IMG/VR virus record: IMGVR_UViG_3300004151_000006
Location: 1 to 64,000 of that record
Direction: 5' to 3' (one strand)
Length of the DNA: 64,000 nucleotides
Within the stretch, counting starts at the first letter, position 1; the number at the start of each line of letters is the position of its first letter. Of this stretch, positions 2,720 to 43,047 are shown piece after piece. The notes below the pieces were generated by a model, which was not told the DNA's origin, searched no databases, and saw only the letters and a list, made by a program, of their open reading frames with translations. Both the position numbers and the translations under genes were made by a program.

Positions 2720-3315
2720 AATTCAAATGGTCATACTTAATACCATTGGTAGTTGTTGGTTTTGTTCTCTTTGTTTTTAGTATGGTCCTTGATCAGCTAT
2801 ACAGTACCACATCCACTAATCACAAACCCATTAGCTTTCAAGCACCACAAGTACAAGAGTATGGAATCAAGCATGAAGAAGAACCACTCCCACCTATCAA
2901 GTATTTTGGATATCTGAAATCAAGTAAGGTCAATGATCTCAATCATCTTTACTTTGAAGTATTTGATCAAGATAAGCATCTATACAAAATAGTCCAACTC
3001 TATGGTATAAAGGTACCCAATGATTCAAATATTAAAAAAGCTATTGACACTGTCATTGGAGTATATGCAGAGAATCAAGTCATCATTGTGTCTAGGACAG
3101 ATCATCCTGATCAACAGTTTGATATTGTCTCAATCAAGATCATCACACCAAACAATATCCTCATAGATTTGGCTGAGCTCCTCACTACAAAAGGCTCCGT
3201 CGATGTCACTGAGGATACCAAACATCAGATGACACATGCCCTCCTTAATAAAGGAAAGTCCTATGCTCAAGAGCACCATTTGGGCATCTGGGCTAATACT
3301 TCCATATCAAAGTAA
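2716..3315 (+). CDS. membrane-anchored thermonuclease (SNase)-like protein, probably degenerate
   Basis: N-terminal TM; VQLYGIKVP, LAELLTTKG, AQEHHLGIWA; no DGDT motif. Confidence 0.55.
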   Translation: MKFKWSYLIPLVVVGFVLFVFSMVLDQLYSTTSTNHKPISFQAPQVQEYGIKHEEEPLPPIKYFGYLKSSKVNDLNHLYFEVFDQDKHLYKIVQLYGIKVPNDSNIKKAIDTVIGVYAENQVIIVSRTDHPDQQFDIVSIKIITPNNILIDLAELLTTKGSVDVTEDTKHQMTHALLNKGKSYAQEHHLGIWANTSISK

Positions 3316-3667
3316 AATCATCATTGCTGGTAGTAGAAGTATCATTGATCCAAATCTAATTTATCCAATCTTAGATGATCATTTTTCATATATAGGTGAA
3401 GTAGTTTGTGGGACAGCTCTTGGTGTAGACACCATTGGTGCTCATTGGGCAATAGATAGACAAGTCAGGATCAGTTGTTTTAAACCTGATTGGCATCCCA
3501 ATGGGCATTATGACAAATCTGCTGGATATAAACGTAATATAGAAATGGGTGAATATGCACATGGACTATTAGCTTTTTGGGATGGTCAATCACGGGGGAC
3601 CAACCACATGATCAATATCATGGATCGGTTGGGTAAACCCTATGTAGTCTATAAACTTGCAGCATGA
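3263..3667 (+). CDS. SLOG family (YspA/DUF2493-like) protein
   Basis: KIIIAGSR, VVCGTALGVD, SAGYKRN, AFWDGQSRGT; ATG 3263 preceded by AAGGA. Confidence 0.85.
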   Translation: MLKSTIWASGLILPYQSKIIIAGSRSIIDPNLIYPILDDHFSYIGEVVCGTALGVDTIGAHWAIDRQVRISCFKPDWHPNGHYDKSAGYKRNIEMGEYAHGLLAFWDGQSRGTNHMINIMDRLGKPYVVYKLAA

Positions 3668-39682: not shown

Positions 39683-41122
39683 ATGAGTAAAACTTATTAT
39701 CCTAAGGATATTTTAGATGGTGATATAGAATTTAAAGAAGATGATAAAGTGATGATTCCATTTTGTGAAAATGGTATGACTACATTTTTAACAGCAGAAA
39801 TTTGCAGTGGAGAACAATTTGAAGGTGAAGGATTGTATTTATCATTTGTGGATGATGTTAGTGTTGATTGGGAACGTGATACAGAACTTCATCATAGATT
39901 ATTTTCTTGTAGAAACATCGTACCTAAAGATGGATATGTTCTTTTACCCCAGGGTTCAACTTCTAAAATAAAAGTATCTTATCCAGCAAAAAGCTCTAAT
40001 CATTTGAGTATGTTATTAACACATTTATTATCATCATGCTGTACCTTTGATTACTGTTGCATGAAGAATAAAAAACATCTTATTTTTGATGATCGTGTTA
40101 TTAATGAACATCAACACTGTAGTACATATGTGTTCCATAATTATTATGACAACATTAAAGAAAAACCATATCTCCATCACGAACCAAATGTACTCTCATT
40201 ATTTGGATATGGTAAATATACTACAAAAAAATGGCAATTATATGAATTAATATCTTTAATATCTGGAAAAAGTAAAATTACTAGAGTTTATGAAAATACA
40301 GATAATGTTGATCTAATACGACTTAAATACGATATGGTTATTTCAGATTTAGAATCTGTAAAAAAGTGTGCTTTTTATAGTGATGAAAAACCACGTTGTA
40401 AATTTCAATATGTGGAACACAAAGAACTTATTAACCATATACCACATATTGAATATATAGGCTGGTATTCTCCATTTGAAAATATATTAAATAGAGAAAA
40501 CATGGCCAGTAACAATGATAAAGAATCTAATCATCATATTCCTCTCACTGAAGAATTTGTCACCAGTGGACTACCAGTTAAAAATCCAGCTAATATACCT
40601 GAAGGTGATCTATATACAAGTGTATTTCCAACTGATGTTGAAGAAATCAATTTTGAACGTAAGATCCCAGATGGTATCTTAAACAATACCAAAACAACAC
40701 TGGCCGCTACTGCTATGTATCAAACCCAAACCAAGAAGGAGAAGACCATGGATACCAAGACTGCTCTCATCGATAGCAACAAAGACGCTGCTTTCATCGC
40801 TGCCCAGATCGAAGCCGGCCGTTTGGCCACTGCCATGCTCACCAAGATGGCTACTCCGCACCTGCCGATGATTCTGCAAGGGTATGCACAGCATCCTCTT
40901 GCAGCATTGATCCTTGCCAATATGGCCGTCTTTGGCGTTGAACAGTTTCGGCCTACTGATGAAAAGGCCAAGTTTATTGCTAAGGCTATGCAGATCTCAG
41001 CATATACTGAGCTGTTCAAATCATTCAATGTTGAAGAGATGATCAATACGGTATTTGATGAACTGAGTGATAAGATTAAGTTCCCCACTATGAAAAAGGA
41101 AATTGAAGACATGAAGCTGTAA
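39683..41122 (+). CDS. composite hypothetical protein with strong internal start at 40748
   Basis: AAGGAGG RBS at 5' end; second in-frame AAGGAG + ATG at 40748 where GC rises. Confidence 0.65.
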   Translation: MSKTYYPKDILDGDIEFKEDDKVMIPFCENGMTTFLTAEICSGEQFEGEGLYLSFVDDVSVDWERDTELHHRLFSCRNIVPKDGYVLLPQGSTSKIKVSYPAKSSNHLSMLLTHLLSSCCTFDYCCMKNKKHLIFDDRVINEHQHCSTYVFHNYYDNIKEKPYLHHEPNVLSLFGYGKYTTKKWQLYELISLISGKSKITRVYENTDNVDLIRLKYDMVISDLESVKKCAFYSDEKPRCKFQYVEHKELINHIPHIEYIGWYSPFENILNRENMASNNDKESNHHIPLTEEFVTSGLPVKNPANIPEGDLYTSVFPTDVEEINFERKIPDGILNNTKTTLAATAMYQTQTKKEKTMDTKTALIDSNKDAAFIAAQIEAGRLATAMLTKMATPHLPMILQGYAQHPLAALILANMAVFGVEQFRPTDEKAKFIAKAMQISAYTELFKSFNVEEMINTVFDELSDKIKFPTMKKEIEDMKL

Positions 41123-41154
41123 TACCCGTGTAGTCCAAAACAGGACAAATATAT

Positions 41155-41200
41155 ATCATATATGGGATGTGAGAATAAAAACTCATGTCCCATATATGAT
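41155..41200 (+). promoter_or_regulatory. 19-bp hairpin overlapping a TATATCAT promoter-like motif
   Basis: atcatatatgggatgtgag/ctcatgtcccatatatgat with two G-U pairs on the + strand; TATATCAT at 41152. Confidence 0.55.
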
Positions 41201-41245
41201 CTGACTCCTTTTAACCACTTACTATCTTTTAAGGAGAGTGAAGCC

Positions 41246-41650
41246 ATGTACAAAGTGGTGGACTCCAATGGCATTGTGCTTGATTTTGATCTTCCGAACA
41301 AAAAGGAAGCTAAGATTGCCCGTGACAAGTATGATCAGGGCACTGCATTTCTTCAGCGTACGGATAAGCATCCCAGAGGGGCATCGCATCTGCCGCAACC
41401 CAAGAAACCCAAGTTTGGAAAACCCGAAGACCTGGTCACCGACACCCAGACCGAGCCGGTCAAACTCACTGATGAGGAGATCGAGGCTGAGGCCGAACGC
41501 CTTGAAGGCTTCGGCTACAAGACAGCCAATGGCACCGATGGTGTCCCTATCTGGAAACAAAGGGTGGAACGCAAAGTCGATGCTCCTTCGGCTTCGGCTC
41601 AGTTCCAGCCCCGGGTCATTGACTTCAGCGAAGACCCCACTTTCGCGTAG
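41246..41650 (+). CDS. hypothetical protein, GC3-rich
   Basis: AAGGAG before ATG 41246; directly upstream of RNA locus. Confidence 0.75.
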   Translation: MYKVVDSNGIVLDFDLPNKKEAKIARDKYDQGTAFLQRTDKHPRGASHLPQPKKPKFGKPEDLVTDTQTEPVKLTDEEIEAEAERLEGFGYKTANGTDGVPIWKQRVERKVDAPSASAQFQPRVIDFSEDPTFA

Positions 41651-41653
41651 TCT

Positions 41654-41679
41654 AAGATCAGATCCTAAGATCTGATCTT
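41654..41679. terminator. hairpin
   Basis: aagatcagatc-ctaa-gatctgatctt then cttcttt. Confidence 0.55.
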
Positions 41680-41691
41680 CTTCTTTAATCA

Positions 41692-42181
41692 GTGGGCACT
41701 TTAGACTAGAGGTAATTCTCACTGCTCACCAATTGGGATCGTCAAATCGGAGATAATGACGACCTAGGCCAAATTGGCTGAATATGGGAGGCAAATATGC
41801 ATTGGCCGTAACTATCATGTCCGGCTCCTTTGGGTCGTGCCTATCTGGGACTCCCGGAAAGGTCATCGGCTACACAGTCTAAGGTAATATCAAAATATAT
41901 CCGGTGAGTAGCTGTGCGGTAATGACAGCGGCAGTCGTTGACATCGACGATATGATGTGGGTTTAGAGGAACCCTCGGGAATGGGTGGTGTGAACACCCT
42001 ACCACACCCTATTCAAACAATAGATCGAGACTGTGACTAAACCACGTACTGAATCAAAGGTGATGTGCACCACCAGAGAGAGACTCGTGGTAACCGGATG
42101 TGTCTTAGGTATCGTTTGTTTATGCACCTCTAACTTGCATTACAGGGCTGGGGCCGGATCATCAGATTTGTGCCTCAGCCC
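41692..42181 (+). ncRNA. candidate large structured non-coding RNA
   Basis: no credible ORF, elevated GC, more than 12 helices including long-range pairs with G-U wobbles; directly upstream of tRNAs. Confidence 0.6.
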
Positions 42182-42195
42182 ATCTTAATTTATGT

Positions 42196-42271
42196 TGGGG
42201 TATAGCTCAGTTGGTAGAGCCATCGGCTCATAACCGAAAGGTCACGTGTTCGACCCACGTTGCCCCAACCA
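42196..42271 (+). tRNA. tRNA with CAU anticodon (probably Ile2; Met not excluded)
   Basis: cloverleaf, loop CTCATAA, GTTCGA T-arm, encoded CCA; lacks the three G-C anticodon-stem pairs of initiator tRNA. Confidence 0.9.
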
Positions 42272-42275
42272 TTGT

Positions 42276-42352
42276 GGGACTGTAGCTCAGTTGGATAGAG
42301 CATCTGCCTTCTAAGCAGACAGTCAGAGGTTCGACTCCTCTCAGTCTCACCA
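42276..42352 (+). tRNA. tRNA-Arg(UCU)
   Basis: cloverleaf, tctgc-CTTCTAA-gcaga, GGTTCGACTCC, encoded CCA. Confidence 0.93.
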
Positions 42353-42362
42353 CCAAAATTTT

Positions 42363-42439
42363 CAAGGACATAGCTTAGTCGTAGAGCCCAGGTCTCACCA
42401 GCCTGGAGAGTTTGGTTCAATTCCAAATGTCCTTGGCCA
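42363..42439 (+). tRNA. aberrant tRNA-like gene (8-bp acceptor; nominal anticodon CAC)
   Basis: caaggaca/tgtccttg + G + CCA; D arm gctt/gagc; caggt-CTCACCA-gcctg; tttgg-TTCAATT-ccaaa. Confidence 0.65.
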
Positions 42440-42514
42440 AGATTATCTCTCTTATATCAGGAGAGTTGTGTAAGACATTCTGTGCATCACCATGAAGGGA
42501 CATGTGGCTGTACA

Positions 42515-42646
42515 GGGACATAACTTCATCGTACCTCAATATCCATCAAAAGTGATACCCATGCGATGATGCGGGAGGAACACGTAAAACACCCTCCATC
42601 CAAATACCTCGACAGTTGACAGGTGGTAACCGCTGAACAATGTCCC
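42515..42646 (+). ncRNA. candidate ~130-nt multibranch RNA
   Basis: gggacat/atgtccc closes helices catcgta/tgcgatg, gcgg/ccgc, ggagg/cctcc, acct/aggt. Confidence 0.4.
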
Positions 42647-42651
42647 ATAAA

Positions 42652-42681
42652 GGAGAGAGTGCATATAAATGCACTCTCTCC
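42652..42681 (+). terminator. hairpin ending the RNA locus
   Basis: ggagagagtgcat-ataa-atgcactctctcc, T-run about 11 nt later. Confidence 0.75.
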
Positions 42682-42729
42682 CGCCACCACACTTTATTTT
42701 TTTTTGTAAATATTATGAAGGAGTAAATT

Positions 42730-43047
42730 ATGGATATACCCCAGATCATCATTGAAGTAAAAAATAATCCAATGGGCTACCGTGTATGCAAATTACATGG
42801 ACCAACAGTTGGTGATTGGGAACACTTTTTCGGTAATGTTAAAAAAGCTAATTTATTTCTTTCTAATAATTCACCACATGCAATCATGGCGATGCTCAGT
42901 GGTATGCTCACAGTTAATACTGGGAAAGAAAAGATTAGTTTATTTATTGATTCAATACTGGATACTGAGGAATATAATACTATCATGAATATCTTACCAA
43001 CCATCAATAAGAATGCTGTAAAACTCAAATCCATGGGAAATACTTAG
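42730..43047 (+). CDS. hypothetical protein
   Basis: AAGGAG RBS. Confidence 0.7.
   Translation: MDIPQIIIEVKNNPMGYRVCKLHGPTVGDWEHFFGNVKKANLFLSNNSPHAIMAMLSGMLTVNTGKEKISLFIDSILDTEEYNTIMNILPTINKNAVKLKSMGNT

What the first reader, a model, noticed from the sequence alone, without database searches (positions are those of the whole stretch)
41692..42181. ~490-nt densely structured, apparently pseudoknotted non-coding RNA heading a tRNA cluster
Seen: no credible ORF and higher GC than the flanks. Local helices: gtgggca 41692/tgctcac 41723; tcgtca 41739/tgacga 41757; ggccaa 41767/ttggcc 41802; tccgg 41820/ccgga 41854. An 11-bp long-range helix atatatccggt 41895/accggatgtgt 42093 (two G-U, valid on the + strand only) plus gagt 41906/actc 42083 encloses gctgt/acagc, gtcg/cgac, gtgg(g)tttag 41957/ctaaaccac 42037 and ggtg/cacc. 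The 3' hairpins are atgca 42122/tgcat 42136 and gggctggggc 42145/gcctcagccc 42172. Crossing pairs: tagagg 41707 (loop of the first hairpin) with cctcta 42127 (loop of a 3' hairpin), an end-to-end kissing loop; and cacagtct 41873 with agactgtg 42028, which competes with ctttagact 41699/agtctaagg 41876. Known: GOLLD and ROOL are large ornate RNAs found beside tRNAs in phages. I see no RNase P, tmRNA or intron signatures. Inference: an ornate phage RNA, possibly a new class. Short helices also arise by chance, so the fold needs covariation support.
Basis: partly seen in the sequence, partly recalled or inferred. Interest (0 to 1): 0.88.

Follow-up and report, generated by a model that had tools for sequence, protein, structure and literature searches.

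The report
Conserved structured RNAs flanking phage tRNAs
A jumbo phage's tRNA gene cluster is bracketed by two conserved, folded non-coding RNAs that match no known RNA family; only the middle 200 bases of the flagged 490-base stretch belong to one of them, and what they do is unknown.

Summary
It is not one conserved 490-nt RNA, though. Two related metagenomic jumbo-phage contigs (L003, L133) keep only the central ~200 nt (41901-42097, "element A"). In A, 10 of 41 pairs carry compensatory changes, against 0-1 in slid controls. The 5' ~227 nt (flanked by AGTCTAAG repeats) and the 3' ~90 nt are specific to this phage. A second conserved structured RNA ("element B", 42440-42690) starts directly after the last tRNA in all three phages. 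Neither element matches any of 4,227 Rfam families, 50,697 GenBank phages, or T4 rnaC/rnaD. Best reading: these are new structured RNAs built into a phage tRNA operon and probably released by tRNA processing. By position they resemble T4 species 1/2 RNAs and GOLLD/ROOL. Their function is unknown. Only three members are known, plus a possible distant pair, so the fold is supported but thinly.

The parts
41654..41679 (+). Terminator-like hairpin (11 bp, then CTTCTTCTTT) right after the stop codon of the 134-aa ORF. Present in the window only.
   Evidence: I6. Absent from L003 and L133, where element A starts 6-10 nt after the stop codon.
41657..41883 (+). Window-specific 5' module. It is bounded by the direct repeat AGTCTAAG at 41649 and 41876.
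   Evidence: No counterpart in L003, L133 or any other fetched locus. Direct repeat D2. MFE z = -2.15, with 4 of 200 shuffles as good.
41901..42097 (+). Element A: conserved structured RNA of ~200 nt, closed by P1 (41901-41907 with 42091-42097).
   Evidence: 73-83% nucleotide identity among window, L003 and L133, at least as high as the flanking genes. 96.7% of cells paired. 10 pairs changed on both sides, against 3.4+-1.5 in shuffles (0 of 500) and 0-1 in slid controls. Covariance model scores 217-244 bits.
41911..41929 (+). P2 hairpin (gctgt / acagc). With its flanks it is invariant in all three phages. It is also shared with a distant element in two unrelated tRNA arrays (L140, L147).
41931..41945 (+). 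S1 5' strand. It pairs with 42023-42034 (11 pairs in three blocks).
   Evidence: Three compensatory pairs, one private to each lineage (columns 49-150, 60-142 and 62-140).
41960..41966 (+). P4 5' strand (ggtttag). It pairs with 42037-42043 (ctaaacc) and crosses S1, giving a pseudoknot.
   Evidence: 7 pairs kept in all three, with one G-C to G-U change and no compensatory change.
41983..42000 (+). Hb hairpin inside the pseudoknot loop. Its sequence differs in each phage but the pairing is kept.
   Evidence: 3 compensatory pairs.
42003..42034 (+). Invariant unpaired motif CACACCCTA (42003-42011), then a variable spacer, then the S1 3' strand (42023-42034).
42037..42088 (+). P4 3' strand (42037-42043), P6 (42044-42046 with 42086-42088), and the nearly invariant GTGCACCACC motif (42065-42074; L133 carries a single C-to-T change).
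   Evidence: P6 has one compensatory pair.
42104..42195 (+). Window-specific linker with hairpins 42122-42140 and 42145-42181. The second has 10 G+C-rich pairs followed by a U-rich tail.
   Evidence: No counterpart in L003 or L133, where 16 to ~55 nt separate A from the next tRNA sequence.
42196..42439 (+). tRNA-Met(CAT) at 42196-42271, tRNA-Arg(TCT) at 42276-42352 and tRNA-Val(CAC) at 42363-42439.
   Evidence: ARAGORN. Rfam tRNA model scores of 61.4, 71.2 and 50.2 bits.
42440..42689 (+). Element B: a second conserved structured RNA that starts directly after tRNA-Val. Hairpins: H1 42447-42465, H2 42480-42515, H4 42573-42597, H6 42652-42681. Conserved unpaired motifs: CCATCC, a 4-5 nt spacer, then CCTCGAC (42596-42613), and a terminal CCACCA (42684-42689).
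   Evidence: 75-79% identity among the three phages. 94.4% of cells paired and 6 compensatory pairs, against 0-1 in slid controls. z = -3.39. Many frame-breaking indels, so it is not coding.
42694..42705 (+). T-run after element B. It is conserved in all three phages but lies at a variable distance from hairpin H6.

Best explanation
The flagged interval is a composite. Its functional core is element A (41901-42097), a ~200-nt RNA closed by a long-range stem. It has an invariant hairpin module, several variable hairpins and a probable pseudoknot (S1 crossing P4).

Element A is the 5' member of a pair. Element B (~250 nt) begins right after the last tRNA. Together with the tRNAs they form one + strand transcription unit.

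Inferred mechanism: the unit is transcribed as a polycistronic precursor. RNase P cleavage at the 5' end of the first tRNA frees A with a defined 3' end. 3' processing of the last tRNA frees B. B's terminal hairpin plus CCACCA tail then protects its 3' end.

The released RNAs would act as stable folded accessory RNAs during infection. The most likely role is binding a component of the translation or tRNA-metabolism machinery. This would parallel the T4 species 1 and 2 RNAs, which sit in the same place, and GOLLD/ROOL, which sit beside phage tRNAs.

Shown here: conservation, covariation, strand, position, and absence from known families. Inferred: co-transcription, processing, stability and any trans-acting role.
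For: - Synteny with two related phages that keep A and B but not the rest of the gap.
- The non-coding stretches are as conserved as, or more conserved than, the adjacent genes: A 73-83% and B 75-79%, against 66-77%.
- Compensatory changes: 10 pairs in A and 6 in B, against 0-1 when partners are slid.
- Each of the three lineages carries its own compensatory change in S1.
- Twelve G-U cells in A's helices would be A-C mismatches on the other strand. The + strand also folds better.
- No conserved ORF, and the indels break reading frames.
- B starts within a few nt of the tRNA-Val 3' end in all three phages.
- In T4 the last tRNA is followed after 1 nt by rnaD and then rnaC, annotated as small stable RNAs, and rnaD ends in CACCA.
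- GOLLD and ROOL are described as phage RNAs near tRNA islands, with tRNAs sometimes inside GOLLD (bioRxiv 10.1101/2024.12.08.627333, PMC5737381).
Against: - Only three sequences exist, and two of them are 83% identical, so every covariation count rests on very few events.
- P2 and P4 never vary, which says nothing either way about whether they pair.
- The alignments are MAFFT alignments, not structural ones.
- There are no expression data, so transcript ends, stability and processing are all inferred.
- In L003 and L133 element A abuts the stop codon of the upstream gene, so it could equally be that gene's 3' UTR.
- The spacing between A and the tRNA varies (16 to ~98 nt), and L133 has an endonuclease gene between them.
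- No partner or target was identified.
Confidence: 0.5

Rival explanations
1. A and B are cis-acting parts of the tRNA operon transcript rather than RNAs with a job of their own. They would be a structured leader and trailer that set transcript stability, the order of processing, or termination and read-through.
For: - They sit exactly at the two ends of the tRNA block.
- P1's 3' strand is followed by a U-rich tract in all three phages, and B ends in a long hairpin with a T-run downstream.
- L003 and L133 carry a further element with alternative hairpins plus a T-run between the tRNAs.
Against: - A 200-nt multi-helix fold with invariant unpaired motifs and a probable pseudoknot is far more than end protection needs.
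- The distance between B's hairpin and the T-run varies from 9 to 27 nt, which does not fit an intrinsic terminator.
- No Rfam leader or riboswitch family matches.
Confidence: 0.25
2. A, the tRNAs and B are one giant GOLLD-like RNA. A would be the variable 5' domain, the tRNAs would sit in the linker and B would be the conserved 3' domain. Such an RNA might self-assemble.
For: In the window, A to B spans about 800 nt (41901-42690) with tRNAs in between, next to a tRNA-Met. That is the layout described for GOLLD.
Against: - No match to the GOLLD or ROOL models at E<=10 in any of the three phages.
- In L003 a MazE-family ORF and a terminator-like element lie between A and B. In L133 an HNH endonuclease ORF does.
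- The only covarying A-to-B pairing is matched by 20% of column shuffles.
Confidence: 0.08
3. Element A is a 3' UTR element or RNA partner of the upstream 134-aa protein. It would be unrelated to the tRNAs.
For: A follows that gene in all three phages and starts 6-10 nt after its stop codon in L003 and L133. The protein has no known domain and occurs only in these phages.
Against: - In the window a terminator-like hairpin and 227 nt separate the gene from A.
- A possibly related element in L140 and L147 lies between tRNAs with no such gene nearby.
Confidence: 0.07
4. One reading: one ~490-nt ornate RNA (41692-42181) with an end-to-end kissing loop.
For: All the proposed pairings exist in the sequence. 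The whole gap folds with z = -4.44.
Against: The 5' 200 nt and the 3' 90 nt, which hold both arms of the kissing loop, are missing from the two phages that keep the core. The 5' part alone folds only marginally better than shuffles.
Confidence: 0.05

Closest known systems
T4 species 1 and species 2 RNAs (rnaC, rnaD)
   Same: They are small structured RNAs encoded on the tRNA strand directly after the last tRNA of a phage tRNA cluster. rnaD starts 1 nt after tRNA-Arg, and rnaD plus rnaC together span 264 nt. rnaD ends in CACCA. A homing endonuclease gene sits inside the cluster, as in L133. From general knowledge, they are released by tRNA-processing enzymes and their function is still unknown.
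   Different: There is no sequence or covariance-model similarity to A or B. T4 rnaC carries a T-arm-like GGTTCGAATCC motif and B has none. T4 has no annotated counterpart of A upstream of its first tRNA.
GOLLD RNA (Rfam RF01998)
   Same: It is a large phage or prophage RNA near tRNA islands, sometimes with tRNAs in the linker between a variable 5' region and a conserved 3' region. One studied member lies next to a tRNA-Met.
   Different: No model match. A and B are separated by ORFs in two of the three phages. A is ~200 nt and B is 250-300 nt, against more than 800 nt for GOLLD.
ROOL RNA (Rfam RF03087)
   Same: It is a phage-associated, pseudoknotted RNA of unknown function, often beside tRNAs.
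   Different: [quoted passage not shown] There is no model match here.
MALAT1 / mascRNA (3' end formation by RNase P at a downstream tRNA-like structure)
   Same: If A is released by RNase P cutting at the 5' end of the next tRNA, its 3' end would be made in the same way. This is my inference, drawing on established knowledge of MALAT1.
   Different: MALAT1 is eukaryotic and is stabilised by a triple helix. No homology is claimed and nothing was tested here.

Membership tests
GOLLD | Match to the Rfam covariance model RF01998 | tested here: not met
   No hit at gathering score or at E<=10 in the window or in the homologous stretches of L003 and L133.
GOLLD | One RNA of about 800 nt or more with a variable 5' region and a conserved 3' region, sometimes with tRNAs in the linker | tested here: inconclusive
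   The window layout fits, spanning ~800 nt from A to B. However, ORFs and a terminator-like element separate A from B in L003 and L133. There is no significant A-B covariation.
GOLLD / ROOL | Located in phages or prophages next to tRNA genes | tested here: met
GOLLD / ROOL | Homo-oligomeric cage assembly | not testable with these tools
   This needs native gels or cryo-EM.
ROOL | [quoted passage not shown] | tested here: not met
   No hit. A is ~200 nt with one multistem junction and one candidate pseudoknot.
T4 species 1/2 RNAs | Encoded directly distal to the last tRNA of a phage tRNA cluster, on the same strand | tested here: met
   B starts right after tRNA-Val in all three phages. A sits at the other end of the cluster and has no T4 counterpart.
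T4 species 1/2 RNAs | Sequence or structure similarity to rnaC or rnaD | tested here: not met
   nhmmer run with --max found nothing. The covariance model of A scored at most 3.6 bits.
T4 species 1/2 RNAs | Stable processed RNA in infected cells | not testable with these tools
   The phage is uncultured and no transcript data are available.
tmRNA, RNase P RNA, group I/II introns, T-box and other riboswitches, HEARO | Match to ARAGORN (tmRNA) or to the Rfam models | tested here: not met
   The tools do find these families elsewhere: HEARO in L140 and a tmRNA in L149.

The most novel reading that the evidence does not exclude
Element A, with its invariant P1-P2 module that recurs in unrelated tRNA arrays (L140, L147), defines a new class of pseudoknotted RNA with a sophisticated activity of its own. 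That activity could be a ribozyme or processing function acting on the tRNA precursor, or a self-assembling particle made together with B, as GOLLD and ROOL turned out to be.
Probability: 0.12. Interest if true: 0.85.

Novelty: new variant of a known kind. Interest (0 to 1): 0.57.

Why it matters
Phage tRNA clusters are known to carry enigmatic structured RNAs. The T4 species 1/2 RNAs have had no known function for about 50 years. GOLLD and ROOL were recently shown to form RNA cages.

Two further RNA families, unrelated in sequence but at the same genomic address in a jumbo phage, suggest this pairing is a recurring solution to some need of phage infection. Candidate needs are tRNA supply, translation takeover, or defence against tRNA-targeting host nucleases.

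Element A is small enough (~200 nt) for direct probing and structure work. Its invariant 5' module may link otherwise unrelated tRNA-array RNAs.

Tried and rejected
Homologue searches that added nothing beyond L003 and L133:
- blastn of the locus, of A and of the L147 element against 50,697 GenBank phages gave only tRNA hits or nothing.
- IMG/VR pattern scans with five A/B motifs returned only the source contig plus chance hits in coding DNA.
- A metagenome scan with the 105-aa neighbour alignment returned only the same phage.
- Copies of the same phage in other samples are 100% identical over the locus, so they add no variation.
- More distant relatives found through the RNA polymerase piece (L125-L131) lack A and B.

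Other readings tested and dropped:
- Coding: no conserved ORF, and the indels break reading frames.
- TAG read-through of the upstream gene into A: by inspection of the sequences, the extension runs into stops at different places in the three phages.
- A-B base pairing: one covarying 6-bp match, but 20% of shuffles do as well.
- A recurring promoter-like motif upstream of A or after B: not found beyond chance, or not informative.
- The 5' module as a multicopy mobile element: no second copy in the 64-kb window.

The L140/L147 element:
- A sequence profile or covariance model aligns only the ~32-nt module convincingly.
- Those loci were picked by that very motif, so relatedness to A stays a lead only.
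- A last scan for more members found only chance hits.

Full report
**What is in the sequence**

The window comes from a 286,688-bp uncultured viral contig, IMGVR_UViG_3300004151_000006. It encodes topoisomerase II subunits and a piece of a phage multisubunit RNA polymerase, so 'jumbo phage' is right.

Between a 134-aa ORF (41246-41650) and a 105-aa ORF (42730-43047) lie 1,079 nt without a credible ORF. This stretch holds a 545-nt gap, then three tRNA genes (Met-CAT, Arg-TCT, Val-CAC; 42196-42439), then a further 290 nt.

The 545-nt gap folds at -185 kcal/mol against -158.7+-5.9 for shuffles (z -4.44). The opposite strand gives z -2.78.

GC is 0.47-0.49 here. The whole stretch 40650-42700 is a G+C-rich island, including the upstream ORF at 0.53, in a genome of roughly 0.25-0.39.

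**Known families**

Nothing but the tRNAs reaches any Rfam 15 threshold. With relaxed filters and E<=10 on short stretches, no family of interest appears. That covers GOLLD, ROOL, OLE, tmRNA, RNase P, introns, riboswitches and HEARO. The same holds for the homologous stretches in two related phages. blastn against 50,697 GenBank phages finds only the tRNAs.

**Relatives**

A search with the adjacent 134-aa protein found one homologue (50% identity) on a 16-kb Logan contig, L003. The 105-aa protein found another on a 4-kb contig, L133. Both are syntenic with the window.

Aligning the intergenic DNA shows that only two blocks are shared:
- Element A: window 41901-42097, matching L003 ~826-1031 and L133 ~2007-2211.
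- Element B: window 42440-42690, matching L003 1611-1907 and L133 3313-3601.

A is 73-83% identical between phages and B is 75-79%. The two flanking genes are 66-77% identical at the nucleotide level. No reading frame is conserved, and the many 1-, 2-, 5- and 8-nt indels rule out coding.

In L003 and L133, A begins 6-10 nt after the stop codon. In the window, the extra 227 nt are bounded by the direct repeat AGTCTAAG (41649 and 41876). That is the footprint expected of an insertion, or of a deletion between repeats in the other lineage.

**Fold of element A**

On the three-sequence alignment I tested a model with six helices (window coordinates):

| Helix | 5' strand | 3' strand |
|---|---|---|
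| P1 | 41901-41907 | 42091-42097 |
| P2 | 41911-41915 | 41925-41929 |
| S1 | 41931-41945 | 42023-42034 |
| P4 | 41960-41966 | 42037-42043 |
| Hb | 41983-41989 | 41994-42000 |
| P6 | 42044-42046 | 42086-42088 |

Of 122 cells, 96.7% form standard pairs. Ten pairs changed on both sides, against 3.4+-1.5 in shuffles (0 of 500) and 0-1 when the 3' partners are slid by 1-3 columns.

Hb has three. S1 also has three, one private to each lineage.

Column 62 varies in step with column 140, not with column 54, so S1 is the better-supported partner.

It is kept in all three phages with one G-U change and no compensatory change. It crosses S1, so the RNA is probably pseudoknotted. The agactgtg segment pairs with 41931-41936 inside A, not with cacagtct at 41873.

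RNAalifold offers a nested alternative for the P4 5' strand, gggt with accc. With three sequences this cannot be excluded.

Twelve G-U cells and the better + strand energy fix the strand.

**Fold of element B**

Four hairpins were tested. They are 94.4% paired, with six compensatory pairs against 0-1 in slid controls. The window sequence folds with z -3.39.

B begins immediately after tRNA-Val in all three phages. It ends with a 13-bp hairpin, a conserved CCACCA and a T-run at variable distance.

**One RNA or several?**

In the window, A to B spans ~800 nt with tRNAs in between, much like the GOLLD layout described in the cryo-EM paper. Three observations argue for separate modules of a tRNA operon:
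- In L003 a MazE-family ORF and a terminator-like element lie between A and B.
- In L133 an HNH endonuclease ORF lies between them.
- The only covarying A-B pairing is no better than 20% of shuffles.

**Closest analogue by position**

In T4 the last tRNA is followed after 1 nt by rnaD (119 nt, ending CACCA) and then rnaC (139 nt). Both are annotated as small stable RNAs, and a homing endonuclease gene sits inside the cluster. There is no sequence or model similarity to A or B.

**A possible wider family**

A scan of one genome per species for A's invariant P2 module found one hit, L140, a contig binned with a Hyphomonas MAG. A looser IMG/VR scan found L147.

In both, the module with five extra identical bases heads a ~200-nt non-coding element. 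The element lies between two tRNA genes of a tRNA array, on the tRNA strand. About four chance hits were expected in the genome scan, but a chance hit landing in such a spot is unlikely.

The predicted fold of this pair has the same outline as A: a closing stem, the P2 hairpin, a long-range helix starting one base later, and a 3' subdomain. Beyond the module the sequences do not align convincingly. Both loci were selected by the motif itself, so I treat this as a lead only.

**Interpretation**

Shown here:
- A and B are conserved, non-coding, + strand elements.
- Their folds have covariation support.
- They sit at the two ends of a phage tRNA block.
- They are absent from known families.

Inferred: they are co-transcribed with the tRNAs and released by RNase P and tRNA 3' processing. 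They would then persist as folded accessory RNAs, as T4 rnaC and rnaD do.

Their role is unknown. I rank a trans-acting role in translation or tRNA metabolism above a purely cis-acting leader/trailer role. The reason is the invariant unpaired motifs and the pseudoknot. The evidence is thin: three sequences, two of them close, and no transcript data.

**Verdict**

This is a real and apparently undescribed pair of structured phage RNAs. The find is of moderate interest and belongs to a known kind of puzzle.

Noticed in passing
window 42440-42705: A second conserved structured RNA (element B) follows the last tRNA and was not part of the finding. It has six compensatory pairs, a conserved CCACCA tail and a T-run.
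   Followed up: yes
L140:685-890 and L147:6318-6590: A ~200-nt element lies between tRNAs in two unrelated tRNA arrays. It shares A's ~35-nt 5' module (the closing stem plus the invariant P2 hairpin) and A's overall fold outline. It has no Rfam or GenBank phage match.
   Followed up: partly
window 41649-41656 and 41876-41883: The 8-nt direct repeat AGTCTAAG bounds exactly the 227 nt that the related phages lack. This looks like an insertion footprint, or the substrate of a deletion.
   Followed up: partly
L003:1140-1265 and L133:3097-3217: A third conserved non-coding element (81% identity) lies between tRNA-Met and tRNA-Val. Its alternative hairpins (CCACCACC / GGTGGTGG / CCCACCACC) and T-run look like an attenuator. 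It is absent from the window.
   Followed up: no
L003:1291-1506: A lone MazE-family (antitoxin-like) ORF sits inside the tRNA/RNA locus of the related phage.
   Followed up: no
L133:2268-2903: The 5' half of a tRNA resembling the window's tRNA-Met is cut off and followed by an HNH_3 endonuclease ORF. This parallels segB inside the T4 tRNA cluster.
   Followed up: no
L127:1700-2035: This looks like a long-variable-arm tRNA whose two halves are separated by ~250 nt, possibly an intron. ARAGORN does not call it and there is no Rfam intron hit at gathering score. About 500 nt of G+C-rich non-coding DNA also follows tRNA-Met at 3043-3560.
   Followed up: no
L140:1734-1987: A HEARO RNA (107.6 bits) sits inside a 12-tRNA array. 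It is followed by what looks like the start of an ORF at ~2054.
   Followed up: no
window 40650-42700: A G+C-rich island (0.42-0.54, against 0.25-0.39 around it) covers the RNAs, the 134-aa ORF and the C-terminal DUF7566 part of the 479-aa protein.
   Followed up: no
window 41155-41200: An inverted repeat with 19-nt arms (89% complementary, 8-nt loop) lies between the DUF7566 gene and the 134-aa gene.
   Followed up: no
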